From Octopus sinensis (Eukaryota), in NCBI RefSeq assembly GCF_006345805.1, contig NC_043020.1:19840001-19904000 (forward strand): DNA of 64,000 bases, written 5' to 3'. The translations under genes and the position numbers were made by a program. A model generated the notes under the pieces. The model was given only the letters and a program-made list of their open reading frames with translations. It was not told the DNA's origin and did no database searches. How positions within the stretch are numbered: position 1 is the first letter of the stretch; each line of letters opens with the position of its first letter. Below, piece after piece: positions 1 through 64,000 of this stretch.

Positions 1-146
1 ACGCAAACAATGAGAGAACCAAATGGCAAACAAGACAAGTGACATAAAGAAGGACCCTTCATCAGTTGTCAGCTGTCCATCTACTCCTCATTTCGAGCAT
101 TTAATGACAATATGAGGCTTTGAAAGGCAGTTGCTCCCACGAACCA

Positions 147-177
<31 letters not shown>

Positions 178-233
178 TATTTATATTATTATATGATTGA
201 ATGCCACACATCCATTTCCAAGTAAGTTTATCT

Positions 234-265
<32 letters not shown>

Positions 266-272
266 TATATTT

Positions 273-440
273 ATACACACATGAGGGGGTACCCAAAAGA
301 AACCGGAATTTTGCAATATCATTTTATTCACTTAGCTTTACATGTTTACACTTTTATTGCCTTCAAAGTATTCTTCATTTGAAGCAATGCATCATGTCCA
401 ACATAGTCTCTTGTCACCACAACATACAACAATAAGATAG

Positions 441-482
<42 letters not shown>

Positions 483-659
483 TATATACACACATGAGGG
501 GGTACCCAAAAGAAACCGGAATTTTGCAATATCATTTTATTCACTTAGCTTTACATGTTTACACTTTTATTGCCTTCAAAGTATTCTTCATTTGAAGCAA
601 TGCATCATGTCCAACATAGTCTCTTGTCACCACAACATACAACAATAAGATAGGTGTGT
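273..659. repeat. Exact tandem duplication, 213-bp period, (TA)n-bounded
   Basis: 273-446 and 486-659 are identical by eye. Confidence 0.9.
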
Positions 660-1010
660 ATATATATATATATATATATATGTATATAATTAAGTATCTA
701 AGTCTTCCCCAATGTATAACAGCAACAAAAATATAGAAACAATTACATTTTCAATACAAGAGGCTATCTTGGACATGAAATGGTTTCGACTGGTATGTGT
801 TTGAGATGTAATGAAGTGAATTTCGATGGTTGTGGATTGCACTTGCTTGGTTCTATCATCCGTTGGACTGTTTTTTGTTGTTTTTTTTAATTGTAATTGA
901 TGTATGATTGAATAGTTAACGTTCACGCTCGTAATACAGAGACATTTGAATTAATTTTTACAATCTAACCGTTCTTTCACACGGAATTTCATCTATCTTT
1001 AAATCATGAC

Positions 1011-1032
1011 CCGGAAGTGACGTTATATATAA
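1011..1032. promoter_or_regulatory. Overlapping ETS-CRE motif CCGGAAGTGACGT followed by TATATAAG
   Basis: Exact motif at 1011-1023 inside a locally CpG-retaining unique patch (about 780-1025). Confidence 0.4.
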
Positions 1033-4000
1033 GGGAACTGTTATTATGTATGTATATCAGAAAATGTACATAAGTTGAATAAATTTGTTGGCCTTTTATA
1101 GTTTTTTTTTTAATAACTGTTAATTTATATAATATTATGTTATATTATATTCATAGTATATTATGTAATATTATAATATAAATAAATTATTGGATTGTCA
1201 ATAGTATCTCTCTATTTAATTTATCTTTATATATATATATATATAGGTATTTAAATGTTTCTCAAAATATACATATACTTCATTTTAATGGTTGTGAAGA
1301 ATTGAAAGGATGTTGTACTTTAGGTGCAGGCATGTTGTGGTTAAGGAGATCGATTTGCATTCATGTGGTATCAGGTTCAGTACCACTGCATGGCACCTTG
1401 GGCAAGTGTCTTCTACTATGGCACCAGGTAGACCAATACTTTTGAAAGTGAATTTGAAGAATGGAAACTGTGCTAAAGCCTTATGTATGTATGTATGTTT
1501 GTATATGTGTGTGTATATATATATATACACACATGCACATATGTATGTGTGCTTGTGTGTCTGTCTTTGTGTTTGTGTTGACAACCAGTGTTGGTTTATG
1601 TCTCAGTAACTTCGTAGTTCAGCAAAATGACTGATAGAATAAATATCAGACTTAAAAAAATTAAGTGCTGGAGTAGAATTGTTCAACTAAACCCTGCAAG
1701 GTGGTGCCCCAGCATGGCTGCAGTCCAATGACTGAAACAAGTAAAAAAAACAATGGAAACAAGTAAGAAAACAAAAATATGAAGAAAAAAAGACCTTGAT
1801 AGCATTAGTGATTAAGTGTGGTCGAAGACAGGGGGAATAACTCCAAAATCGAAATCTATAAAAATTCAGAAGGGTTTTAGGGAATTTAAATTTATTTTTT
1901 ACCACTGGGTCAGCAAGGGCAGCACTCATTACCCTTAATTTTACAGAACTGCTGAGATAAGGTTTTGTGAGCACCAACTAGTAAAAATCAGAAGGAACAT
2001 TGTTTATCTTGCTTCATTGCACGCGGACACGTTTAATTTGATCTACAGCATTCCAATATAACTTAAATTTCTTTCCAGAACAGCTATGCCTGAAATGTCA
2101 ACACTCATCTCCACTGCACCCGCTTCTATGCAGGGTGCATCTGCATGCTAACACATGTTTTACAACTAGTGCACAATAGAAACTAAAGTATACATAAAAG
2201 GTTTTTTTTTTTTATAATTGCTAAGTTAATAATATTTATTACACTGAATTAATTAATAATTATATATTATTAATTAATAATTATACATTCAGTATAAAGC
2301 ATCCTTGGCACAGATATGGATGTGTGGTTGAGAAGTTTGCTTGGGTTCAGTTCCACTGCATGGCACCCTGAGCAAGTGTCTTCTATTGTAACCTTGAGTT
2401 GACCAAAGACTTGTGAGTGGCTTTGGTTGATGGAAAATGAAAGAAGTTGCTGCTGCCACCACCACCACCACCATCATCATTCTCTTTCTCCTCTTCATCT
2501 CCATTCAATGTCCATTTTCAATGCTGGCATGGATTGGACTGTCTTTTTCAATTAATTTGGGGAATGAATTTGGATTAGTTTAGTAAAATTAACTTCTATG
2601 TTTGGAACCAAGTAAAAAATTCTTAGATAAAACTATATGAAGATTTAATTTGAATACAAATATTTTTAAATAAGGACCAGAGGCAGTCGCAAGTGAGATG
2701 GTATCAAAAGAGTTACCAATTTCAGTAAAACTGAAAGAAAAAAAAGTCCCAGGAAAATAGCAATGGCCTGCGTAGACATGAAATGAAAACATAAAAGTAA
2801 AAAACATTATTAAAAAAAATAATAATTGCATATTTATTCTTAATATGTCCAAGCAGATTCAAGTGCAAAATATACAACTAATTGTTGTGTATGTCAGAGG
2901 AGATAAAGTTCTCCTTCTTAAGATGACAGTGTGTTTGTAACAAGCTCCGTTTCTTGGTGCAAAGGATTCTGGAACACAGTTGTTTCAGCATATCATGTCT
3001 CACCAGACAGACACACCCAGGCCTTTGAGCCTAAACAAGCCATTGGCCTTTGCTTATAATTTTAACAAATAAACAGTTTGCTGAATGGTGCTTATATCTG
3101 CCAACTGATAAAATAAATCATTATTTTCACTGTGTTGATAAAAGCTGATAAAATTTGAAAAATAAGCTGGGCTTTTATGCCATGAAGAATACGGAGTTAT
3201 AATGTCTGAAGAATGACCTTTCTTCGAAGAAATGAGAATTCTCTTGAAACAATTACATTGAGGGTTTACATGCATTTGCATATTTGTCAGAGGCCACATA
3301 TGATTTTGTGTGCATCAACTACATTGCTCATCAGGTTTTTATTTGATTTAGTCTTTCAATAAAATTCTCCTTTCTTCACAGAACATCTTCACTGTTCCCT
3401 CTTATATATATATATATATATACACACACACATACATTGTGCATGTGTTTCTATTTGTGTGTACCCATGTCATGACATCATGTGATAGTTATAAATGATC
3501 AGTCACTGTCACACAATTGACATTGTTCATTTCTAATCTGCCATAGAAAACATGTTTGGCCAAAGGGAAATATTACCTTACTTGGAAACAGGTGAAGGTT
3601 AGCAACAAGAAGGGCATCTGGTTGTAGAAAATCTGCCTCAACAAATTCTGTCTTACTCCCATGCAAGAATGGAAAAGCAGACATTAAATGATGATGATGT
3701 TTCAGTGCCCGTCAACATTCATCGAATAATTTACATGTGGCTGTGTGGTAAGAAGTTTGTTTCTCAAGCACATGGTTCCAGGTTCAGTTTCCATGCATGG
3801 TACCTTGGGAAAGTGTCTTCTCTATAGCTTGGGCCAACCAAAGACCTGTGAGTGGATTTGATAGACAGAAACAGAAAGAAGCCTATTGTGTGTATGTATG
3901 TGTGTGTGTGTGTCTTTGTGTTTTTGTTTATCCCCAATCACTGCTAGACAATCAGTGTTGGTTTGTTTATGCCCCTGTAACTTAAAGAGTGATAGGATAA

Positions 4001-4278
4001 GTACGAGGCTTATAAAAATACATACTAAGATCAATTTGTACAACTAAAATTCTCCATGGTGGTGTTCCAGCATGGCTACAGTCTAATGACTGAAACAAGT
4101 AAAAGATAAAACACAAGCTTTTGTTTGCAGCAACTTCTAAAAATATGAAGAAACTTTGCTCATTGTGCTTCATGGCACACAAACACGTCTTTGTTTTACA
4201 AATACAGCTGTACCAATTCTTTAGACTTGAAACTGACTTTGGCCAAATTAATAAATGAAAGGTAACAGAAATATTTAC

Positions 4279-4507
4279 CTGAATGTAATGGAGGGTTTTA
4301 TTACGGGTTCTAGAAAGGTTCTGTGATTTCTCTATCTCATCTTTCACAATGTCAACCAGTTGAAGATTAGCATCGGATTTGACTTGAGCCTTCTTTATCT
4401 GCCAGGGACTAATTACTGGAGGAGGAGGAGGGCTGGTGGGAGATGTAGCTTCCATTGAGCTAGATCCCTCTGAAAGTTTCTGTTTTCTACAACTTGTTAA
4501 GCCCCAA
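4279..4507 (-). CDS. IBTK: IBTK coding exon 23 (probably penultimate)
   Basis: ttattgtag|T...CAG|GTAAAT; WGLTSC...SPW...LQLVDIVKDEIEKSQNLSRTRNKTLHYIQ (compare IBTK FASIVEEE...LIRSREKPLALIQ); 229 nt, phase 2 to 0. Confidence 0.88.
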
Positions 4508-5493
4508 CTACAATAAAGATATAAATATACATAAGTAAATGTGTGGTGTGTGTGTGTGTGTGGATGACTGGTGACTTCAATGGACGTGTTGGGTAGCACT
4601 TGCGCGCCTTCGACAGTGTGCATGGTGGCCATGCAGTTAGTTCCAGCAATGAGGAGGGAACGAGGCTACTGCAGCTCTGTGATGCAAAATAAAACCTTAT
4701 GATCTGCAACAGCAGCTTCGGAAAGCCTGCCAGTCACCTGATAACCTATCAATCTGGTGTCCATATTAGCCAGATTGACCACATTCTCACCAGAAAGTGA
4801 GATGCATGGTTGCTCATAAATGCGCAGACCTTCCCTAGTGAAGGTTAGTCAATAGTGACTTCAGACTGAAGGCTAAAAGGATTCCAAGTAGAGCAGTCTG
4901 GAAAAGAAGGATCTAGAAGCTTAAGGATCCTTTGAATAGTCAGAGATTTGGAGATGTCCTAATATACAGTAGTGGATTGGAATCAATAGAAACTTTATTT
5001 TTAAACTTAATCCTTCTGTTGAAATATACTGCCTTTGTAAAATACTTTTTAAAATATTGAATAATTAACTAAAATAACTGATATTATTAATCAGGTGTTT
5101 GCAACATAAATTAACATGAAATTTCGATGGAAGTTTGTGTCATGGAACAGATTTGTTCTATGATACAGACTTTCTTTAAAACAGGAAGTTAAGAAGCAAA
5201 CACTTTAGACAGTATTCCATTACTTTTGTGTCTGGTGACATAAACACTGTTCTGTAAATCAGCCAACATGCTTATATGTCAGTTCACATGTTTTTGTGAT
5301 ATATGCTACACAACACTGCATTACCACACATGCTTATATGATATATCAGAAATGCAACATGTTTATATGAGCTGTCATACATTAATGTATTAGTCCACAT
5401 GTTTATATCAAACATCATAGACAGTTTGGAGTCAGTTCACATATTTATATGATTTATATACATAATTCCAGCACTAAAATCCGAAATTCTTAC

Positions 5494-5568
5494 CTGAAAG
5501 TATTTTTATTATTTTCATGGCTCCCAGACTTTGCTGCTTTTAGATTCTGGCACCGACTCTTTACCTCC
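5494..5568 (-). CDS. IBTK: IBTK coding exon 22
   Basis: tttttag|G...AG|GTAAGA; EVKSRCQNLKAAKSGSHENNKNTF; 75 nt, phase 2 to 2. It fits the flanking phases but I recognise no homology. Confidence 0.65.
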
Positions 5569-6492
5569 CTAAAAATAATGAAGCAATATCAAACATTATC
5601 AACATGCACAGACGAGAGAAAAATGAAGCTAGTATATGCAAACAATACTCAAATCAATACCAAGACTTGCCAAAGTATTATTGTATCTAAGTTTTTATTT
5701 CTTTTTCATCATTTATGCCTTTAATAGCAACATCAGCATCAGGACTTCCTATTTCATTTTGTAAAAAATATATATGGACATGGCTGTGTGGTAAGAAGCT
5801 TGCTTCCCAACCGTGTGGTTCCGGTTTCGCCTTAGGCAAGTGTCTTCTATTATAGTCTCAGGCTGACTAAAGCCTTCTGAGTGGATCTGTTAGACGAAAA
5901 CTGAAAGAAACCCATCGCATATATATATCATAATCATCATCATCGTTTAACGTCTGCTTTCCATGCTAGCATGGGTTGGACGATTTTGACTGAGGGCTGG
6001 CGAACCAAATGGCTGCACCAGGCTCCAATCTTGATTTGGCAGAGTTTCTACAGCTGGATGCCCTTCTAAACGCCAACCACTCTGAGAGTGTAGTGGGTGC
6101 TTTATATATATATATATATATATATACTCTTTTACTTGTTTCAGTCATTTGACTGTGGCCATGCTGGAGCACCACCTTTAGTCGAGCAAATCGACCCCAG
6201 GACTTATTCTTTGGAAGCTTAGTACTTATTCCATCAGTCTCTTTTGCCAAACCACTAAGTTACGGGATGTAAACACACTACCATCAGTTGTCAAGCGATG
6301 TTGGGGGACAAACAAAGACACACAAACATTTACACACACATACATATATACGATGGGCTTCTTTCAGTTTCCGTCTACCAAATCCACTCACAAGGCTTTG
6401 GTCAGCCCAAGGGTATAGTAGAAGACACTTGCCCAAGGTGCCATGCAGTGGAAATGAACCCGGAACCATGTGGTTGGTAAGCAAGCTACTTA

Positions 6493-6524
<32 letters not shown>

Positions 6525-6528
<4 letters not shown>

Positions 6529-6753
6529 TAATCAATGAAATTCTAACTTAGTCTGATTTTCATGTTTTATTATTTTGCAATTTTTACAATTTTACAATAT
6601 TGAAATAAACTAGTACTTTCATGCATTACACAATCATCAGGTTTATATAGTGACGGTAGTGTTCCACAATTGACAACTGTTGTGTAAAATTGTAAAAATA
6701 AAAAATAATAAAACATGAAAATCAGACTAAGTTAGAATTTCATTGATTAATAT
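6525..6753. mobile_element. MITE-like hairpin element
   Basis: Perfect inverted arms of about 52 bp (ATATTAATCAATGAAATTCTAACTTAGTCTGATTTTCATGTTTTATTATTTT), extending imperfectly to about 70 bp. Confidence 0.65.
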
Positions 6754-7185
6754 ATTATTCTATACACAATCATACAAACATGGAGATATATATATATATA
6801 TATATATAATTATTATTTGAGGGAATAAAATCCAAACTTACAAGGAAAAAAATTCAATTTAGAAATACTAAATCAAATTTCACACAATATAATATATATA
6901 TAAAAAATTAGGAAAAAAACACCTTTTATCAATTCAAAATGAACAATTAAATTACACCATCTGGAAAATTACATATAATAGAAAAGTTAAAATTAAAATA
7001 ACAATAAAATATAAAGATTAAGTAAATTGCAAAAACAATAATATAAACGTATATAATAGGTAGAAAAACGACACGTGTTTCGCGGCTATATTTAAGAAAT
7101 GATTATAGGAGTAGAGAAATCACTTTGGTTTCTAGATGGTGTAATTCAATTGTTCATTTTGAATTGATAAAAGGTGGTTTTTTTC

Positions 7186-7252
<67 letters not shown>

Positions 7253-7916
7253 GTATATGTGTTTTTATGCCTGTGTTTCTCCCTCATCACCACTTGACAA
7301 TCAGTGTGGGTGTGTTTACATCCCTGTAACTTAGCATATCAGCAAAGGAGACCGATAGAATAAGTACTAGGCTTAAGAAATAAATCTTGGAGTTGATTTG
7401 TTAAACTAAAACCCTTCAAGGCAGTGCTCTAGCATGGCCACAGTCAAATGATTGAAATAAGTAATAGAATAAAAGAATACATCTCCAAGCTTTGTGTACC
7501 TTGAGAAGAGGTTATTCTGGAATCTTATTATTATCTAAAGAGGGGCTCTTCATCCACAGATACTCCCACTCTAATATAGCAAATATTCAAAATGTGAAAT
7601 TGAAATCTCTGACTGATTAGTAAGTTATAGATGTTCTCATTTTATTAATATTCCAAGTGTACTATTGTCACGAAGAAACCATAATTAGTCAGTCATTTGT
7701 CAAACATTCCAAGTGATATTCTAATTGACTAATTGCACCATAGATGCTCCTGCTTATTGAATATGCCTGATGTAATAAACCAAAAGCACTAATTCTTCCT
7801 ATTAAACCAATATTCTAGAAGTGATACCTTGACCAATATATCAGAGATATTCATCACACCCATTTGTTTACTCTATCCAAATGTGATTCTTTAGCCAATA
7901 ATGCAAAGATACTCAC

Positions 7917-7928
7917 TTAGACTTCAGA
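7917..7928 (-). CDS. IBTK: Candidate 12-nt IBTK microexon (exon 21)
   Basis: ttgtttgttttgcttttttcgtttag|TCTGAAGTCTAA|GTGAGT; frame-preserving phase 2 to 2, adding 4 codons (QQ-NLKS-KEVK). No homology support. Confidence 0.55.
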   Translation of the reverse strand, partial: SEV

Positions 7929-8020
7929 CTAAACGAAAAAAGCAAAACAAACAACCCCACCTCACAAACAAACAAACACTCATCATTAAAAAATAATGTG
8001 ATGTAAAAGATTGTAATTAC

Positions 8021-8268
8021 TTTTGCTGTGGCAATTGACTTTGTTGTTCTGCCATGATGTTGGTCAGACTTATCACAGTTTGTGGTGGTGGATGTGGTAG
8101 AGGTTGTGGAGGAGTTCGAGTAGAGCCCGTTCGAGTAGAGCCTGTTTGACTTTTGTCAGGAACTTTCACAGGTGACAAAATTAGGCTCCAAGGATTGTCT
8201 TTGTCACGAGCAGCTGCTGGCTTCTGACAGCTTGTAGATTCTGTAAAACTGTGATTTAAAGCACCAGC
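8021..8268 (-). CDS. IBTK: IBTK coding exon 20
   Basis: ttcacag|GCT...AA|GTAATT; open frame AGALNHSF...NPWSL...PPQTVISLTNIMAEQQ (compare IBTK VDLRTIMEIE); 248 nt, phase 0 to 2. Confidence 0.85.
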
Positions 8269-8915
8269 CTGTGAATTTAGAAAAAATACATAAGAATCAT
8301 AATGAATTCTTTAGAAGCAGTCTTATTCAGGAAACCCTTTATTACACAGGAACAAGATAAAATGTTCCAACATGAGGACTGACATACTTCTAAAATAATA
8401 AAATAATAATTTTTCTGATTATTAACCTCACTTTTAGCAATAGAAAATGTTTGAATATTTATACTAATATTATGCTTTAGCTGGTCTGTTCTGATTGTCT
8501 TCTACAGACATGCATCAGTAAAAGACAAACACAAACACACACACACACACACACACACGCATACATACATCATTTGTTGAGGATATGGGACTTGGAAATC
8601 ATCTTTTATTCTCTCCTGTCAACTGGTATGCTGACATTAAGACTGATCTGCTGAAAACATTTGGCTACTTGCTTAAAGGAGTTCCTAAGCCGGTCGTTAA
8701 TTGTGTCAGAGAGGTTGAAGCTGAACTCAAAACACACAGGGCTGAAACACATACCCCAAGACACTCTAAGAATTCTACAAATCTACTGCTTTCCATTAGA
8801 ATTATTTATAAACTCCAAAAGGATGGAAGGCAAAGTTAAGCTTAGTGGAACTGAATGCAGAGCACAGAAACAGAACTATAAACAGAACTGGATAATTCAG
8901 TCAGTTTGACACATT

Positions 8916-9755
8916 TGAGGGTGGGCTGAGAATTTCATAGGCTGGCTATGAAGGAGTGATGCTAGAGCTGTGAAATCTTGCTTGCATTAATTTCAACCCT
9001 TTTTATTAACGACTGTCTTGTTTCTTTCCAAGTAAAATGATATCTGATAGTTCAAAGAAGACTTCAAAAGAAACTGGTAACAACTTCAAAATGAACAAAA
9101 TCTGGCATCATGGTGTTATTGAGTGCCAGCAGAAAAAGGGTTTAGCCCCCAAGGACCATCATGCTGACATGGTTGCTATATTAGGGGATGACACCCTAGC
9201 TTTATCAACGGTGCAAAAGTGGGCAACTGAATTTAGGAGGAGAAGAGAGAGTCTTAAAGATGACCCAATGTCTGAACATCTTGCAACTGCCACCACTGCG
9301 GAAAACATTGTTTTCATCACATGGTGATGGATGACAGGTGACTAACTATAAATCAAATGCCCAATGCTAGTAGCATATCTCATGAGAGAGTTGAGAATAT
9401 TTTGCACAATGAACTTGGTATGATGAAGGTTTCTGCTTAGTGGGTGCCACAACTTCTGACACCTGATCAAAAGCGCACCAGGCTGATCATGTCACAAGAA
9501 AATTTGACATTGTTTGAGGCAGATCTTAGCTGATATCCTTGAACATTTGCTAGCTCAGGATGAGTCTTGGCTTCATCACTTTGAGCCAGAGATAAAGAGA
9601 CAATCCATGCAGTGAAAACATCCCTCTTCACTTGCTCCAAAGAAGGTCAAGTTCGTTTCATTTGCAGGGGAGATGATGGCCCACATTTCTGGAATGCAAA
9701 TGGCATTGTTTATTGACTATCATCAAAAGGGCCACACAATCAATGGAGAGTACTA
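8916..9755 (+). mobile_element. Mariner transposase relic (3'-truncated)
   Basis: HTH region DTLALSTVQKWATEFRRRRESLKDDP; further degenerate mariner-like residues downstream. Confidence 0.8.
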
Positions 9756-9764
9756 TTAATCTTT

Positions 9765-10082
9765 CTGATTCTGATATTAATGTTCCTTAGCATTTTCTTA
9801 GCTATTAACTCAATTTCAGTCCTCACTGAGTTTAAGAATCTACAAGCGGGCTTTATTACTGAAGTTAGGTTTGTGATCTTTTAGAGTAATAAAAGCTTCC
9901 CTCTTTGCTAAGCATTCGAATCTATCATCAATTTTACTACATTTAGAGAGGAATTTAACTTCATTGTTAACATCATTGTGTCTGTCTATGTTAGTTTTCT
10001 TATATTTAGTGGAAATAGAATCATTCAACAACTTAATCATATACATCATTAGTGATTTCATACACACAATCGTTATCATCAA
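9765..10082 (-). mobile_element. PLE RT N-terminal fragment
   Basis: IDDRFECLAKREAFITLKDHKPNFSNK carries the AFITLKDHK motif typical of invertebrate PLEs. Confidence 0.8.
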
Positions 10083-10760
10083 TATTTATCTCCATGTTCC
10101 ATGCTAGCATGGATATACATGCATTACATACATACACACATACATACATATACATGCATGCATATATATATAATATATACATATAAATGCATACATATAT
10201 ATAAATACATATATAAATTCATATTTATAAATACATATACATATATTCATACATACATATAAAAATACACACACAAACGTACACACACACACATACATAG
10301 AGCTTTGACCAGGAGGAACTGATATCATCAGACAGTCTCCAATGAACATTGAGAGTTTCACCCCCAAATTGTAACATGTTATGGTTCAAGGTCGAAACAC
10401 CCAATGATTGTTGGATACTGTCTGCTGACATCAGTTACTCCTGGCAAAAGTGCCATTCATTTTGGTGAGTGGAAAAGAAGCACTTTTTTCTCGGTGTCAT
10501 CAATAACATAATATATACATAACAAGATTCTTTCAGTTTCTATCAACCAAATACAATTACAAGGTTTTGGTTGACCCAGAGCTATAGTAGAAGACACTTG
10601 CTCAAGGTGCCACACTGGAAGTGAACCCAAGACACAAGGTAGAGAAGCAAGCTTCTTAACCACACAGCCATGCCTGTGCCTGATATGGACAGATATATCT
10701 TTAAAATAACCATCCTATCTTTCTTAATAAATTTAGATAAAGATAATTTTGAAAAAATAC

Positions 10761-12212: not shown

Positions 12213-13471
12213 CAGGGGCTGGACAAAATAATAGAAACACCTAGCATCATAGCATTGTAATTCTGAAATGTTTATAAAACCGTCAAAAGCTTCTTTATTT
12301 TTATGTTTTTGATTTATTTTTAGTGTTGCTTAATATGTTTTGCTAAAATTGCTGTTTCTTTTCAGATATCATCAGAAATAGGTAATTAAAATTCATTAAA
12401 ATGACAGATCTGTCGGACTTTCAAAGAGGTTAAATTGTTGGTTCTCATATGGCAGGAACTAGCATAATGAAAACGACTGAAATGTTTGGTGTATCAAGAA
12501 GTATTGTCTCGAAAGTAATGACAGCTTTTGAGAAAGAGGGAAAAACCTCCTCGTCGAAACAAAACTCCAGAAGAAAGCCAAAACTTTCAGACAGGGACCA
12601 TCGGACTCTTACGCGAATTGTTAGAAAACATCACGAAAGTATAGCTCCCAAAATTACTGCAGAGCTTAATGAGCACCTCCAGAACCCAGTTTCCACAAAA
12701 TCTGTTCACCAGAATCTGACAAAGCCAGATTTCATGGGAGGGCTGCAATCAGAAAACCACTACTTTCAAAAACAAATGTTGCAAAGCATTTAGAGTGGAG
12801 TAAAAAAACCTACAGAATTGGTTCCTAGAGCAGTGGAAGAATGTTATTTTCTCTGGCGAGTCAGCCTTTACCTAATTTCTGACCACCAGCTGAGTATACG
12901 TGTGGAAACAGCCAAAAGAAGCATTTGACCCAGACTGCCTACTTCCAACTGTTAAACATGGAGGATCTGTGATGATCTGTGGGGGCTATATCTTGGAAAT
13001 CTGCTGGCCCAATGGTTCCCTTTCATGGCAGAATAAATAGACAAGACTGTTTAAGCATTTTATCTGATCAAATTCATCCTATGGTTGCAGAACTGTTTCC
13101 GGAGAGAAACGCAATCTTTCAGGATAATAATGCACCAATTCACACAGCTAAAGTTGTTACTGAATTGCACAAGTGAAGTTGGACATCTTTTCTGGCCACC
13201 TCAGTCCCCAGATCTGAATATTATAGAACATTTATGGTGCATTTTAGAAAAACAATAAGGAGTTGATATCCTCCACCATCATCACTACAAGAACTGGAGA
13301 CTGTTTTAGCTGAAGAATGGACAAAAATTCCTTTGGAAACAATTCAAACTTTGTATGAGTCCATACCTCGTAGAATTCAAGTTGTAATTATTGCCAAAGG
13401 TGATCCTACCCCATATTAAAATAAGTTTGTTTGAAATTTTAAGGTGTTTCCATTATTTTGTCCAACCCCTC
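12213..13471 (+). mobile_element. Full-length degenerate Tc1-like DNA transposon
   Basis: TIRs CAGGGGCTGGACAAAATAATAGAAACACCT / AGGTGTTTCCATTATTTTGTCCAACCCCTC; TA at left; transposase remnants MTDLSDFQRG, TVKHGG, FQDNNAPIH, WPPQSPDLNIIEHLW with stops and frameshifts. Confidence 0.92.
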
Positions 13472-18969: not shown

Positions 18970-19277
18970 CTGGCAAAGGAGAAATAAAGATATTTTTGAG
19001 ATTCATTACCAACTGAGTAAACATAGAAGGGAGCAGGATGGGGAGGGAGTGTAAACCTGACCCTTGGATTAGTAATTAAGCATCAGTTTCTAATACTGGC
19101 ACCAAGCCAGAATTAGAATTGTCCAGGAATTGAAACCATGATCTTGGAATCATGGGTGCAACATTATATATATATATAATATATATATATATGTGTGTGT
19201 GTATATATATAATAAATAATAATGAAATTATTATATACAGTGCTCAGGTGCACCACATATTTATACACATACCAATA

Positions 19278-20573: not shown

Positions 20574-20892
20574 ATGGGAAAATATCTATTGTGTGTTTCT
20601 TAAATGGCTTACAAACACCTTCCACGCTGCAATTGTTTTCGTTCCAGCACACAATCTCAGATCAAATCACTTGCTATGCGAGTACATCTCTGTAATATGG
20701 GAAAATGTTATCTTCTATAATCTCTGATAAACCTATACCTTGTGAGTGAAACTGTGTGGATGGAAACTAATTCAAAAGGTTCAGCCTTGTCATCACATAG
20801 TGTTACATTGTACTTGACAATGGAATACTCAGCCACTTACACATTAATTTAACAAGGTAACTATTAAAAAAAAAGACAGAAAATTGACTTAC

Positions 20893-27983: not shown

Positions 27984-28089
27984 CTTGATTTGTACATCAT
28001 GTATTAGAGACATGTCATCACTATCATCCAGTAGTTCTCTGAAGGAGGAGATCATTCTAGAATTTCTCTGAGCTGTGTAATCTTTTAAA
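27984..28089 (-). CDS. IBTK: IBTK coding exon 11 (BTB1 start)
   Basis: atttcag|T...AAG|GTTTCT; LKDYTAQRNSRMISSFRELLDDSDDMSLIHDVQIK; 106 nt, phase 2 to 0. Confidence 0.9.
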
Positions 28090-45424: not shown

Positions 45425-45745
45425 CTGAATGAGAAGCCTTGCTACAGCCAAATGACCATAGAACAAAGCCTTGTGTAAAGCAGTCCATCCTGATTCTCTG
45501 TCCACGGCATTGACATCCACATGTTTCTCATCCAGAAGCCACTGGACAACATCCAACTTACCACAGCCAGCCGCCACATGGAGGGGGAAATTGCCGTCAA
45601 GATCACTTTGTTTGCCTGCGACATGGCATGTCTGGAAGTAAGCTTTGATTTCTTCAAAACTTCCTTTTGTTATTGCTGCATTTAACTGGGAAGCATGTTG
45701 TTTCGATTGACACTTCAAACCACACTCAGCTCTGATGAAAGACAT
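45425..45745 (-). CDS. IBTK: IBTK coding exon 1 (start codon, ankyrin repeats)
   Basis: ATG at 45745; MSFIRAECGLKCQSKQHASQL...TKGS...PLHVAAGCGK...DRESGWTALHKALFYGHLAVARLLIQ matches the IBTK N-terminus (ESGWTALH..FYGH). Donor CAG|GTGAGT; 321 nt, phase 0. An acceptor tttcag at 45770-45771 implies an upstream non-coding exon. Confidence 0.95.
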
Positions 45746-53039: not shown

Positions 53040-54955
53040 AAAATTGGATATAATGAAATCGAATGAATATGAAGAATACAATGATATCGAAATGAATTTA
53101 AAATTAAGTGATAATATATTTTCCGGGTTTGTGTTCGACCCACCGGTTTTTTTCTTCCTTTTTTACTCTTATATTAATTATTTTGTTGTTTTTTCTTTTG
53201 TTTTTTTTCCTTCTTTTCTGTTCACTAGCGCGGCCCCATTCACCCTCAACTTCCTTACGACATTTGTCCATCTTTTCTCAAACGTTCTTTGAGGCAGGCA
53301 CCTCTTCTCCAGACTGATCTTCCAGGACAGGTGGTAGTTAAAAAAACTAACCAACCCGTGTCCGGAGATAAAGTTGCCTGTCTCGATTCCTCTTCCACGC
53401 GTCACCCATACTGTCTCTTTCAATACGGCTACTACGCAGAAAAATGACGCTTCCTTGTCCTTGTCAAAGGAGGGAGGCGGCACAATCTTGAAAGACTCAG
53501 TCGATAACCGTACTCTTTCTGTATCTGACACAAGTTGTTCGACATAGGTTTTGAATCCCCTCAGTTCCTCACAATGTACGGAGGCGTGCGTGACAGTTTC
53601 ATGGACACGCCCGCATCTCGGGCATACGGGTGGGATACCTGCACTATGTCTTGACAACCTCTCTCAAACTGGCAAGGCCGATCGTTAGCACAACCAAGCC
53701 AAGGATTTCTGGAAGTTGTCCAGATACCTCAGCCCGAATGTTCTTCCGAACAAGTTGACAAGTTGTTCCTCATCGAAGCCTAGAGTCTCCCCCAGGACGT
53801 CGTCGGACATGTGCTCTACCAACCCGCTATAAAGATCCGCAGTGGCAGCCCTGCTGCGGGTATTGCTCGCTCGGGAGAACAGAGCGAGTGCATGTCTGCA
53901 CTCCCTCTGCCATTCGCTCATTTTTGGTCTCCGCGTGATCCATGCGCCCACGTCCCGCAAGAACGTCAATTGTGGCAAGAAGAACTTGACATGCGGTGAC
54001 CAGACCCGTTCACCATCAAGGTAGAGCCAGTGGTGTCTCAGCCTCAGCGCAAATCATGCGCATCATCAGCCAAGGCATCCCTAACCCGCCTTTTAACGGT
54101 TTCTGGTAGCAGATGGAGCGCTTCACAAGTGGTGGTTTCCCATTCCACAAAAAGTGGAAAAGGATCCGTTCCATCTTGGTCAGCCACACACCGGGGTAAG
54201 GCACAACGGTTAGGCGGTAGGTTATCACGTATGCTATAAACACCTGAGCAACCTCGGCCCTCCCTAGCAAGGATAGCGACCTCTCAGACCAAGTCTGGGT
54301 TATGGCTGTCACCTTGCCTGTGACGTCGCTCCAGTTTTTCTCCATCTGGAGATCTGGTCTAAACCAGACCCCAAGCAGTTTAACAGGGCCCTCCGTCCAA
54401 CGTCCTACGATGCTGTTGGGAAGCATCGACTTGCCCCTCCAGGTGCCGAGTTGCAAGCCGACTGATTTTTCCTGGTTAATTTTTGCTCCTTCCACCGCTT
54501 CGTATCTTTTGATGGCGTCTTCTACATGAGGTAGCTGCCCCCCATCATACACGATGATGGAGACATCATCTGCATATGCCATCGCTCCTCTACCATAACA
54601 TAGATCATGCGGGTCTTTCCCCGTGGCCTCCAACATCCGCAGCAGTGGCTCAAGAGCCAGCACATACATGAGCGGGGACAAGGGGCAGCCCTGGCGAACT
54701 GAACGCTCAGTCGCGAACGGCTCCGAGAAGAAACTGTTCACCCGGACGACTGAATCGATGTCGCTATAAATAGCATTGATCCATCCACGGAAAGTCGACC
54801 GCCCGGAGGACCGCCGCCAGATACCGACGGTCAACCCTATCAAATGCGTTAGACTGGTCTAAATTCACCAGCGCCCCACATTTGCCAACCCGCCAAGTGG
54901 CGAAGACATGATTCCGGCTTAGCGAAGGCATCTGGTAAACGCACCTGCTATCACT
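53040..54955 (-). mobile_element. Tx1/L1-type non-LTR retrotransposon, 5'-truncated
   Basis: AFDRVD, SVRQGCPLSPLMYVLALEPLL, YADDVS, GAKINQEKS, GGLGMP; C-terminal CPRCG..HET..H...HC zinc knuckle; frameshifts. Confidence 0.9.
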
Positions 54956-62295: not shown

Positions 62296-63303
62296 TTAGG
62301 CGTTATTAATTAGGTATTTCAGTCTATGTTTACATTTAATTTTTCGTTCCTCCTCAGCATTAAGAAGAAGCTCCGTTTTAGCCCATGATATCTCCATGAA
62401 TTCATGGGTACATAACAGACATGACCTATTTCCAATTCTATAAGATTTAGCTTTACATATTATCTCCCACTTTAATTCATAATTAATTTCTTTCGTTTTT
62501 AAACTCCAAACATATTTACTTAGTCCTGTAGAATTCCTAAGTTTCTTATTTTTACATGAATTCAAGTGCTGTGCTATTCTCTGTTTAATTTTATTCGATG
62601 TCGAACCTATATACGTTCTATCTGGGTATATTTCAATATCCGTATTATTTATTCCACTATTTCCATTCCCATCTACTTTTACCGAAGCCGCACATTTATA
62701 TACTACATCCCTAACATTACATCTTCCATTAAAATTGCATTGGTTTTTATCTCTACAGTTACGACTATTACGGTCTCTATCACTCCTATTCATATGCTTA
62801 TTTAATTTATCATAGTAATATTTATTCAGCCTATACTTATATATTGATGAAATAATATTCCCTACATTATTAGTCGTTGAATACCCCACTCCTATAATAT
62901 TTCTAGAGAGTATTTCGATATATTTCTTATTTTCCATAATAAATGATTCAATTGTATTAGTGATATCTTTAATAATATTACTTTTAACTTGAGTACCATA
63001 TGGGACAATCAACCATATTATTTTATTATTATTTTTCTTTATGTTTATATTATTATTAATCCCCTTATCTTTATTAACCCCAGTCTCGTTATTATCTTCT
63101 ATATTATTTACTGTATTGTCTCCTATATGATTTTCTTTTAATTTTAAATCCTTTGCCTTTAATCTCAACCTATCTATATACTTTATATCATTTATATTTT
63201 TCCTGTTTTTTATCATCTTGAATTCCATATTTTTACGGTGTGTTCTTCTATTATTACTTTTATATATATTATTTTTATTTTTTATTTTTATTATAATATA
63301 CAT
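62296..63303 (-). mobile_element. PLE-derived ORF with GIY-YIG endonuclease and no RT (335 aa)
   Basis: WLIVPY..V.SNI, VGYSTTNNV, CNFNGRC..VVYKC, YIGSTSNKIKQRIAQH..S, STGLSKYVWSLK..Y.LKWEII, CLLC..E, C.H..KYL. No RT motifs in the ORF. Confidence 0.85.
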
Positions 63304-64000
63304 TTCTATTCTCGTTTATATTTACGTTTATATTACTCCCTATATTAACTCTATTTAGGTTACTTACGTTATTCTGTTTTATATAATAATTATTCCTATT
63401 CATATTCTTATTATAGAATTTAATTTCTTCGTTATAACCAGCCTACCTTAATGAGGTCCTGGACCTAGGATATTTATATGTGCAGAAATAGCACGGTCCC
63501 TATTACGGAAGCAATTTTGCATTGTTTGTTTCTCTTGAGCTGTGTAGAAGTTCAAGAAGTAATAGAAGCTGAAGAATATTCCGTCCATAAGGTCCAGTTT
63601 AGTGGGGATGCAGTTATTGTTACGTTGAATGTGTGAGATGGTCTGGAGACATCCTCAGTGAGTTTACAGTCAAGGTTTTTTTGGTGACTTTGAGTGGTTT
63701 TGCTACGTGTTGTATGGGGCTAAACAGGTTTAACTAGGTAACTGTATCCTTGGTTAAATCTTAGTTTAGGATATGAAAGAGTGACCGTAAATCTGAAAGA
63801 TTGTAGAAATGACGAGAGCAAAATAGAAAGGAAAGAAAAGGAAAACGAGGCAAACCTTATTTCATTAACTTACTGAATATGATACTCTGTATACCGACAC
63901 CCATATTTATTGTGTTTGCAAGTAATGTATTAAGTGTTGCAGAGTATCATATTCGAAATACGCCGCTTCAAAATAGTATTCCCTGTATCAAACACTAGAT

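What the first reader, a model, noticed from the sequence alone, without database searches (positions are those of the whole stretch)
7917..7960. 12-nt frame-preserving microexon with an SRRM3/4-type UGC motif
Seen: strong U-rich acceptor, donor AA|GTGAGT, 12 nt in phase 2 to 2, a 92-nt upstream intron, and TGC at positions -16 to -14 from the exon start. Established: neural microexons of 3-27 nt in bilaterians are promoted by eMIC-domain SRRM2/3/4 proteins through a UGC just upstream of the 3' splice site. Inference: a neuron-specific 4-residue insertion (NLKS) in the IBTK C-terminal region that automated annotation would probably miss.
Basis: partly seen in the sequence, partly recalled or inferred. 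Interest (0 to 1): 0.72.

Follow-up and report, generated by a model that had tools for sequence, protein, structure and literature searches.

The report
Unverified 12-nt microexon candidate in octopus IBTK
A 12-base stretch inside an intron of an octopus IBTK gene looks like a tiny in-frame exon, but the only transcript-based protein models I could reach (from a sister octopus species) skip it, and similar look-alikes occur by chance in the same gene, so it is a testable candidate and not a demonstrated exon.

Summary
On the minus strand there is a U-rich 3' splice site ending in UAG (7930-7929), a 12-nt segment TCTGAAGTCTAA (7928-7917), a GTGAGT donor (7916-7911), a 92-nt upstream intron, phase 2 to 2, UGC at -16..-14, and a predicted NLKS insertion. 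The host gene is IBTK: ANK, RCC1 and BTB domains, about 94% identical to Octopus bimaculoides XP_052832485.1.

No available evidence shows that the segment is spliced. Both O. bimaculoides IBTK models in the protein collection read ...LPQQKEVKSR..., the skipped form. No NLKS isoform is in their cluster.

I scored splice sites with matrices trained on the gene's 21 real acceptors and 22 real donors. The candidate's acceptor is good and its donor is mediocre. Three other non-exon pairs in the same gene score as well or better. Only the in-frame length and the UGC set the candidate apart. That leaves about 0.02-0.1 chance candidates of this kind per gene, similar to my prior for a real microexon.

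My estimates are about 0.6 for a silent pseudoexon and about 0.3 for a real microexon, of which about 0.2 is neural and eMIC-dependent. RNA-seq junction counts and orthologous introns would decide it; I could reach neither.

The parts
8021..8268 (-). Upstream coding exon of IBTK (exon 20 of the 22 in the window). It encodes AGALNHSF...ISLTNIMAEQQSQLPQQ plus two bases (AA) of the next codon. Its donor AAA|GTAATT is weak.
   Evidence: The junction to 5568 reproduces O. bimaculoides XP_052832485.1 exactly (EQQSQLPQQKEVKSRCQNLKAAK).
7929..8020 (-). Putative 92-nt upstream intron, which exists only if the microexon is used. Branch-point-like UUUAC has its A at 8004, and UUAAU has its A at 7986. Two weak GAG sites lie at 7980-7979 and 7962-7961, and a GGGG run at 7958-7955.
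   Evidence: Read directly. No special RNA structure was found (z = 0.47). It would be the shortest intron of the gene; the real introns are 213-4421 nt.
7931..7952 (-). U-rich (U/G) polypyrimidine tract of the candidate 3' splice site. Positions -22..-3 hold 17 pyrimidines of 20. There is no UCUC element.
   Evidence: The acceptor scores 11.2 bits, better than 16 of the 21 real acceptors of this gene.
7942..7944 (-). UGC at -16..-14 from the exon start.
   Evidence: Among strong acceptor-like sites in the window, a TGC occurs at -22..-8 in about 5% and at -32..-5 in about 17%.
7917..7928 (-). Candidate 12-nt microexon TCTGAAGTCTAA, phase 2 to 2. It would insert N-L-K-S before a retained K.
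   Evidence: It is absent from both O. bimaculoides IBTK protein models.
7911..7916 (-). Candidate 5' splice site GTGAGT, preceded by exonic TAA.
   Evidence: The donor scores 6.2 bits, and 13 of the gene's 22 real donors score higher.
5569..7916 (-). Downstream intron if the microexon is used. The annotated-type intron is 5569-8020 (2452 nt). It is rich in (TA)n and (GT)n repeats and SINE-like copies.
5494..5568 (-). Downstream 75-nt coding exon, phase 2 to 2, encoding (K)EVKSRCQNLKAAKSGSHENNKNTF. Its acceptor also has a UGC, at -17..-15 (5585-5583).
   Evidence: The exon is present in the O. bimaculoides models.
4279..4507 (-). Next coding exon (SWGLTSCRKQKLSEG...TLHYIQ). It also starts with one codon-completing base, so the 12-mer would stay in frame even if the 75-nt exon were skipped.

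Best explanation
The 12-mer and its flanking signals are most likely an intronic pseudoexon. By this I mean a chance pairing of a good acceptor-like site, created by a U/G-rich low-complexity stretch that ends in UAG, with a GTGAGT 12 nt downstream. It happens to be in frame and is not spliced into IBTK mRNA at an appreciable level.

On this reading the normal transcript joins 8021 directly to 5568, as in the annotated O. bimaculoides protein. The 92-nt 'intron' never exists. What is shown: the anatomy, the gene model, the skipped form in the sister species, and the background rate of look-alikes. What is inferred: that the site is silent in this species.
For: 1. Both NCBI models of O. bimaculoides IBTK read ...QSQLPQQKEVKSRCQNLK... 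without NLKS. These are XP_014784055.1 and XP_052832485.1, about 94% identical to the window's protein. Their 90%-identity cluster in a collection of about 15 billion proteins has only three members, and none carries the insertion.

2. I scored sites with matrices trained on the gene's own 21 acceptors and 22 donors. The candidate's sum is 17.4 bits. Three other pairs on the same strand of the same gene match or beat it. They start at 20860 (20 nt, only 33 nt after a real donor), 43968 (20 nt, would shift the frame) and 27938 (22 nt of TA repeat). None of the three can be a coding exon.

3. Locally composition-matched shuffles give about 2.1 such pairs per 64-kb strand. I multiply by the gene's intron fraction (about 38 kb of introns), the share of lengths that are multiples of three (0.36), the chance of being open in the required phase (about 0.7) and the chance of a TGC (0.05-0.17). 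This leaves about 0.02-0.1 chance candidates of this exact kind per gene. My prior for a real microexon that passes the same filters is about the same size. That prior rests on my own recollection that animal genomes hold a few hundred neural microexons.

4. The donor is only mid-to-low quality because the exonic part is TAA.

5. The pyrimidine tract lacks the UCUC element described for eMIC targets.

6. A 92-nt intron would be less than half the length of the shortest real intron of the gene, 213 nt.
Against: 1. In its own 2.45-kb intron the candidate stands far above the other 48 in-frame possibilities: 18.8 bits against 10.1 for the next best, on the first version of the matrices.

2. Its acceptor is better than 16 of 21 real acceptors.

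3. A UGC at -16..-14 is rare among strong acceptor-like sites here (about 5%). In human SRRM3/4-dependent microexons a UGC occurs in 74-79% (bioRxiv 10.1101/2024.09.17.613571).

4. The only open frame of the 12-mer is the one the intron phase requires.

5. The insertion would fall in an indel-rich linker 8-10 residues after the conserved SLxxIMxEE motif, a typical setting for microexons.

6. Annotation pipelines often miss 12-nt exons. The O. bimaculoides model is also visibly imperfect elsewhere, since it lacks the first half of BTB1. Its silence is therefore weak evidence.
Confidence: 0.6

Rival explanations
1. It is a genuine neuron-enriched cassette microexon.

In most cells a 12-nt exon is too short for exon definition and is skipped. 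In neurons the eMIC-domain isoform of the single octopus Srrm234 gene would bind near the UGC at -16..-14. It would help recruit U2AF and SF1 to the distal branch point and U-tract. The short 92-nt upstream intron would then be removed by intron definition, fusing the 12-mer to the upstream exon. The strong GTGAGT would be used for the long downstream intron.

The product would be IBTK with NLKS inserted just after the conserved SLxxIMxEE motif.
For: - The length, phase and open frame fit.
- The UGC is in the expected position, and this is rare by chance (about 5-17%).
- The U-rich tract contains no A for 30 nt, so the branch point must lie at least 33 nt upstream. This agrees qualitatively with the long AG-exclusion zones and distal branch points described for eMIC targets (PMC8797185).
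- The acceptor is in the top quarter of the gene's real acceptors.
- Short surrounding introns are described for Drosophila eMIC exons.
- The insertion site is an indel-tolerant linker next to a conserved short motif.
- The next exon (75 nt, symmetric) also has a UGC, at -17.
Against: - No transcript evidence exists, and two O. bimaculoides models skip it.
- There is no UCUC element and no CUAAY branch point.
- Comparable decoys exist in the same gene.
- No IBTK microexon is reported in the searchable literature.
- Neural exons of the outgroup species (amphioxus, sea urchin, centipede, octopus) are rarely conserved (3%). Only two neural microexons are bilaterian-ancestral (in APBB and MADD), so homology adds no prior support (bioRxiv 10.64898/2026.09.05.749416).
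Confidence: 0.2
2. It is a real microexon but not a neural, eMIC-type one. It would be included at a low level everywhere, or in another tissue or stage, or constitutively in this species only. Inclusion would be driven by the good acceptor, the GAAG purine element in the exon and intron definition of the 92-nt intron.
For: - The splice-site quality is comparable to that of the gene's real exons.
- The length is frame-preserving.
- The upstream donor is weak (AAA|GTAATT) and is followed 104 nt later by a consensus GTGAGT.
Against: - Constitutive or high inclusion would very probably have appeared in the O. bimaculoides models, and it does not.
- Otherwise the decoy arguments above apply.
Confidence: 0.1
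3. Only the acceptor is used. Splicing from 8021 to 7928 without use of the 7916 donor would read NLKSK and then a stop (TGA within GTGAGT). This would give a truncated IBTK or an NMD target. An AATAAA lies about 270 nt downstream, near 7645.
For: - The acceptor is strong.
- An in-frame stop follows immediately after the donor position.
- An AATAAA is visible near 7645.
Against: This is pure speculation. No transcript or protein model ends there. The donor directly after the 12-mer has a consensus intronic part, so it would normally be used.
Confidence: 0.03

Closest known systems
eMIC-domain (Srrm234 / SRRM3 / SRRM4)-dependent neural microexons of bilaterians
   Same: It is 3-27 nt long and in frame, and lies in a disordered linker next to a conserved short motif. 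A UGC lies close upstream of the 3' splice site. The U-rich tract is long, and the branch point is forced to be distal because there is no A in the last 30 nt. The intronic part of the 5' splice site matches the consensus.
   Different: Inclusion in any RNA, neural specificity and factor dependence are all unshown. The tract is U/G-rich without UCUC, and there is no CUAAY branch point. The AG-exclusion zone is only 30 nt. The exonic half of the donor is poor (TAA). No orthologous microexon is known in IBTK of any animal.
Intronic pseudoexons (decoy splice-site pairs that are not spliced)
   Same: It lies inside an intron that the sister species' models remove in one piece. It arises in a low-complexity U/G-rich stretch. 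Three equally scoring pairs in the same gene are clearly non-exons.
   Different: Unlike those three, it has a length that is a multiple of three, is open in the required phase and has a well-placed UGC. It also outscores everything else in its own intron by a wide margin.
Mini-exons recognised together with a short upstream intron as an exon-intron-exon unit (vertebrate troponin-type mini-exons; recalled from my own knowledge, not checked here)
   Same: A very short exon is preceded by a very short intron (92 nt) and followed by a long one. This is the arrangement said to let a mini-exon escape steric exclusion.
   Different: It was not tested here. The other introns of this gene are all 213 nt or longer.

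Membership tests
IBTK (inhibitor of Bruton tyrosine kinase) gene | Ankyrin repeats, RCC1 repeats and BTB domains in that order in one protein | tested here: met
   Pfam hits to ANK, RCC1 and BTB on successive minus-strand exons. The gene model has 22 exons and encodes 1177 aa.
IBTK (inhibitor of Bruton tyrosine kinase) gene | Close sequence identity to a protein named IBTK | tested here: met
   About 94% identity along the whole length to XP_052832485.1, 'inhibitor of Bruton tyrosine kinase [Octopus bimaculoides]'.
eMIC-dependent neural microexon | Exon of 3-27 nt, frame-preserving and without a stop codon | tested here: met
   12 nt, phase 2 to 2, reads N L K S (K).
eMIC-dependent neural microexon | UGC motif close upstream of the 3' splice site | tested here: met
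   UGC at -16..-14. The chance rate is about 5% for -22..-8 and about 17% for -32..-5 among strong acceptor-like sites.
eMIC-dependent neural microexon | Long polypyrimidine tract enriched in UCUC, strong CUAAY-type branch point, long AG-exclusion zone | tested here: inconclusive
   The tract has 17 pyrimidines of 20 but is U/G-rich with no UCUC. The best branch-point-like sites are UUAAU (57 nt upstream) and UUUAC (75 nt upstream). The AG-exclusion zone is 30 nt, with two GAG sites further upstream. The features are described in PMC8797185 and.
eMIC-dependent neural microexon | The exon is actually included in mRNA | tested here: not met
   Only indirect data were available. Both O. bimaculoides protein models, and their whole 90% cluster, are the skipped form. 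RNA reads and transcripts of the window's own species could not be reached.
eMIC-dependent neural microexon | Higher inclusion in neural than in non-neural tissue | not testable with these tools
   No RNA-seq access.
eMIC-dependent neural microexon | Inclusion depends on the eMIC domain protein and on the UGC | not testable with these tools
   This needs a minigene or knock-down experiment.
eMIC-dependent neural microexon | Conservation of the exon and flanking intron in related species | not testable with these tools
   No cephalopod genomic DNA was reachable. Protein searches with C-terminal exons found nothing. The metagenome and prokaryote genome scans found nothing relevant.
Intronic pseudoexon | Splice-site-like pair of a quality that occurs by chance at a comparable rate in the same sequence context | tested here: met
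   Three non-exon pairs on the gene strand score at least 17.4 bits, and shuffles give about 2.1 per 64-kb strand.
Intronic pseudoexon | No usage in transcripts and neutral evolution | not testable with these tools
   The data limits are the same as above.

The most novel reading that the evidence does not exclude
The 12-mer is a cephalopod- or octopod-specific neural microexon of IBTK, included through the Srrm234 eMIC isoform acting on the UGC at -16. It adds NLKS directly after the conserved SLxxIMxEE motif of a cullin-3 adaptor-type protein. The neighbouring 75-nt exon, which has a UGC at -17, might be co-regulated. If so, it would be a case in which the eMIC cis-code was read correctly from raw lophotrochozoan sequence, and a new neural isoform of a broadly expressed gene.
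Probability: 0.2. Interest if true: 0.4.

Novelty: not a real feature. Interest (0 to 1): 0.2.

Why it matters
If the exon is real, it would add one lineage-specific entry to the neural microexon repertoire of an animal with a large, independently evolved brain. It would also show that the eMIC sequence code (short in-frame exon, U-tract, UGC near the 3' splice site) predicts exons outside vertebrates and insects.

A single 4-residue insertion in a disordered linker of IBTK has no known functional consequence. Hundreds of such exons are known in other animals, so the value for a specialist is modest.

If it is a pseudoexon, the case mainly illustrates something else. Splice-site quality, frame and a 3-nt motif together are not enough to call a microexon. 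The same gene holds three equally good decoys.

Tried and rejected
1. Word-indexed protein searches. I queried the two flanking exons, the ANK exon and a 374-aa composite of BTB and C-terminal exons. They returned no cephalopod IBTK. The only hits were exon-level ANK ORFs from an ENA metagenome contig (67% identity, L001) and from Logan contigs. Those loci stop about 10 kb from the ANK exon and do not reach the C-terminal introns.

2. Collection scans. The JGI metagenome scan with the upstream exon gave one spurious GC-rich bacterial contig. The prokaryote genome scan gave nothing.

The exhaustive search with a single in-window exon was accepted, and it produced the O. bimaculoides proteins.

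4. Exact look-up of the reconstructed full-length protein, with and without NLKS. The last 43 residues were borrowed from O. bimaculoides because the terminal exons lie outside the window. Neither version was in the collection. This is uninformative.

5. Literature. No paper links IBTK with microexons. No cephalopod microexon catalogue was readable. No supplement is held for the one 20-species study that includes octopus. The 2019 eMIC paper is not held.

6. Ideas rejected:
- Rfam scan of 5000-9000 gave only sub-threshold SCARNA7 hits, the stronger one (6448-6630) on a GT repeat.
- RNA structure around the candidate is not unusual (z = 0.47).
- The 12-mer is not a duplicate of part of the 75-nt exon, and the region is not a repeat copy.
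- It is not a recursive splice site, because the AG is not followed by GT.

Full report
**What is there.** The window is AT-rich and repeat-rich animal DNA. On the minus strand the upstream exon (8268-8021) ends ...CAG CAA AA|GTAATT. Ninety-two bases further on lies ...GUUGUUUGUUUUGCUUUUUUCGUUUAG|UCUGAAGUCUAA|GUGAGU.

- acceptor AG at 7930-7929;
- 12-nt segment at 7928-7917;
- donor GTGAGT at 7916-7911;
- TGC at 7944-7942, which is -16..-14;
- the next exon starts at 5568.

The upstream exon leaves two bases of a codon. The 12-mer therefore reads AA|T CTG AAG TCT AA|G, giving N-L-K-S-K, against K when it is skipped. Only this one of its three frames is open. Reading through the 8021 donor gives a stop after one codon. 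The 18-mer of exon plus donor is unique in the window. The surrounding 220 nt are not a repeat copy and not a duplicate of the next exon.

**The gene.** Successive minus-strand exons carry ankyrin, RCC1 and BTB domains, which is the IBTK architecture. An exhaustive profile search with one in-window BTB exon returned P0004 at 93% identity. P0004 and its cluster mates are NCBI proteins of Octopus bimaculoides: XP_014784055.1 (695 aa), XP_052832485.1 (1195 aa, 'inhibitor of Bruton tyrosine kinase') and XP_014784058.1 (545 aa).

I used the 1195-aa protein as a guide to place 22 coding exons from the ATG at 45745 to 4279. They encode 1177 aa at about 94% identity. The window therefore comes from a different but closely related Octopus species. 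All junctions have GT-AG, and the introns are 213-4421 nt. The last 43 or so residues are encoded beyond the window's start.

**Direct evidence on use.** Both O. bimaculoides models that cover the site read ...NIMAEQQSQLPQQKEVKSRCQNLKAAK..., the skipped form. An isoform with four extra residues would fall in the same 90% cluster. That cluster has only these three members.

This argues strongly against a constitutive or highly included exon, at least in the sister species. It argues more weakly against a minor or neural isoform, for two reasons:
- Twelve-base exons are easily lost by read aligners. This is my own knowledge, not a tool result.
- The model is imperfect elsewhere. It lacks the exon at 28089-27984 that supplies the first half of BTB1, and instead reads through a donor.

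I could not reach RNA reads, transcripts of the window's own species or any cephalopod genomic DNA.

**Is the signal more than chance?** With thresholds set at the candidate's own values it looks rare. There are 118 AG-N(3-27)-GTRAGT pairs on both strands. Only two have at least 85% pyrimidines at -22..-3. Only the candidate also has a length that is a multiple of three and a TGC. Shuffles give 0.02-0.035 such pairs per window.

Thresholds chosen after the fact flatter a candidate, so I used a single score. I trained a pyrimidine-tract and acceptor matrix and a donor matrix on the gene's own 21 acceptors and 22 donors, with leave-one-out scores for the real sites.
- The candidate's acceptor scores 11.2 bits, better than 16 of the 21 real ones.
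- Its donor scores 6.2 bits, and 13 of the 22 real ones are better. The exonic half, TAA, is poor.
- The sum is 17.4 bits. Among roughly 11,000 AG-N(3-27)-GT pairs in the window, three others that touch no real splice site reach this score, all on the gene strand.
- Those three start at 20860 (20 nt, only 33 nt after a real donor), 43968 (20 nt, would shift the frame) and 27938 (22 nt of TA repeat). None can be a coding exon.
- Shuffles that keep composition in 100-nt blocks give 2.1 such pairs per 64-kb strand.

Microexon-like pairs of this splice-site quality therefore occur one to three times per gene here. What distinguishes the candidate is:
- a length that is a multiple of three (9 of 25 lengths);
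- an open frame in the required phase (about 0.7);
- a UGC, which among strong acceptor-like sites occurs at -32..-5 in 17% and at -22..-8 in 5%.

Multiplying these leaves roughly 0.02-0.1 chance candidates of this exact kind per gene. In its own intron it is the clear outlier: 18.8 bits against 10.1 for the next of 49 in-frame possibilities, on the first version of the matrices.

**Fit to the known cis-code.** The literature describes eMIC-dependent exons as:
- very short;
- having a long AG-exclusion zone, a UGC close to the 3' splice site, a long pyrimidine tract rich in UCUC and a strong CUAAY branch point;
- in Drosophila, having short flanking introns (PMC8797185).

In human, a UGC between branch point and AG is present in 74-79% of SRRM3/4-dependent microexons but is not strictly required (bioRxiv 10.1101/2024.09.17.613571).

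The candidate has the length, the frame, the UGC and a U-rich tract. It has no A in the last 30 nt, so any branch point lies at least 33 nt upstream; the candidates are UUAAU at 57 nt and UUUAC at 75 nt. It lacks UCUC and CUAAY. Its AG-exclusion zone is an ordinary 30 nt, bounded by two weak GAG sites. RNA folding shows nothing unusual.

At the protein level the junction lies 8-10 residues after the conserved SLxxIMxEE motif. At this point IBTK homologues from other animals differ by indels, so a 4-residue insertion would be tolerated. That is typical of microexons, but it does not discriminate between the explanations.

**Weighing.** From my own recollection, animal genomes hold a few hundred neural microexons. 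That gives a prior of a few per cent for a gene of this size, of which perhaps a third would pass these filters. Expected true positives are about 0.01-0.03, and expected false positives about 0.02-0.1. The skipped form in the sister species lowers the odds further.

My estimates are:
- about 0.3 that the 12-mer is a real exon, split as about 0.2 neural and eMIC-type and about 0.1 otherwise regulated;
- about 0.6 that it is a silent pseudoexon;
- a few per cent for other uses of the acceptor, for example a truncating read into the stop that follows the 12-mer.

These numbers are soft. The priors are from memory, and the likelihoods come from a single 64-kb window.

**Comparison with the known, and novelty.** The candidate would work like an eMIC-type neural microexon. 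It meets the structural membership criteria that can be read from DNA, apart from the UCUC and branch-point details. The defining criteria are inclusion, neural bias and factor dependence. All three are either untestable here or, on the indirect evidence, not met.

No IBTK microexon is reported in the searchable literature. Across 20 bilaterians only two neural microexons (in APBB and MADD) are ancestral, and only 3% of neural exons of the outgroup species (amphioxus, sea urchin, centipede, octopus) are conserved. If real, this one would be lineage-specific.

If real, it is a new member of a well-known kind. As the evidence stands I file it as probably not a real exon, with a one-in-three chance of being wrong. 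The tests that would settle it are cheap and are listed under next steps.

Noticed in passing
window 27984-28089 (-) and 31582 (-): The O. bimaculoides RefSeq protein XP_052832485.1 lacks the 35-residue exon SLKDYTAQRNSRMISSFRELLDDSDDMSLIHDVQIK, which forms the first half of BTB1. It reads through the donor equivalent to 31582 instead (FARFLITLLFMPQHFFFQKKQ). In this window that read-through hits a stop, and the spliced exon completes the Pfam BTB match. The sister species' model is probably wrong at this point.
   Followed up: partly
window 5583-5585 (-): The acceptor of the neighbouring 75-nt symmetric exon (5568-5494) also carries a UGC, at -17..-15. It is the only one of the 11 real acceptors examined with a UGC in the -22..-8 zone. 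This could be coincidence or a hint of shared regulation.
   Followed up: partly
window 20860, 43968, 27938 (-): Three other microexon-like AG...GT pairs (20, 20 and 22 nt) on the gene strand have splice-site scores equal to or above the candidate's. None is compatible with a coding exon: one is too close to a real donor, one would shift the frame, and one is a TA repeat.
   Followed up: yes
window 29084, 4089, 1731 (-); 6145, 16312, 30336 (+): Copies of a SINE-like repeat (...cttttacttgtttcag|TCATT[T/G/A]GAC...GCCATGCTGGAGCAC...) mimic very strong 3' splice sites, scoring 11-16 bits, on both strands. They are a built-in source of decoy acceptors in this genome.
   Followed up: partly
window 1-4278 (-): The last 43 or so residues of IBTK (IEEKAITDLMAYY...NVNRKL in O. 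bimaculoides) have no match in the window. The terminal coding exon or exons lie beyond coordinate 1.
   Followed up: yes
window 15533|11111 junction (-): The tetrapeptide NLKS also occurs in the normal protein at the junction of exons 18 and 19 (...YKENLKSVKHR...). It is encoded by different codons there (AAT|TTA AAA TCT), so this is apparently a coincidence in a K/S/N-rich sequence.
   Followed up: partly
window 4486 vs 4507 (-): An in-frame alternative acceptor lies 21 nt inside the exon that starts at 4507. Using it would remove SWGLTSC. It scores very weakly (-1.6 bits against 11.3), and the sister species uses 4507.
   Followed up: yes
window 54019-54858 (-); 12434-12790 (+): Transposon remnants are present. 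There is a reverse-transcriptase ORF (Pfam RVT_1, E = 2.7e-11) upstream of the gene. Inside an IBTK intron there is an ORF with a weak homeodomain-like HTH match (HTH_32, E = 7.7e-4, below the Pfam cut-off), possibly a DNA-transposase remnant. An N/K-rich 339-aa ORF at 62299-63315 (-) has no Pfam match.
   Followed up: partly
L001 (ENA ERZ21867824 ctg113795l, 127.5 kb), 10001-10339 and 19127-19249: A metagenome-assembly contig carries an IBTK-like ANK exon (67% aa identity, 77% nt identity) and the third coding exon 8.8 kb downstream, against 2.4 kb in the window. It is presumably host DNA of another mollusc or cephalopod with longer introns. The region homologous to the candidate could not be reached.
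   Followed up: partly
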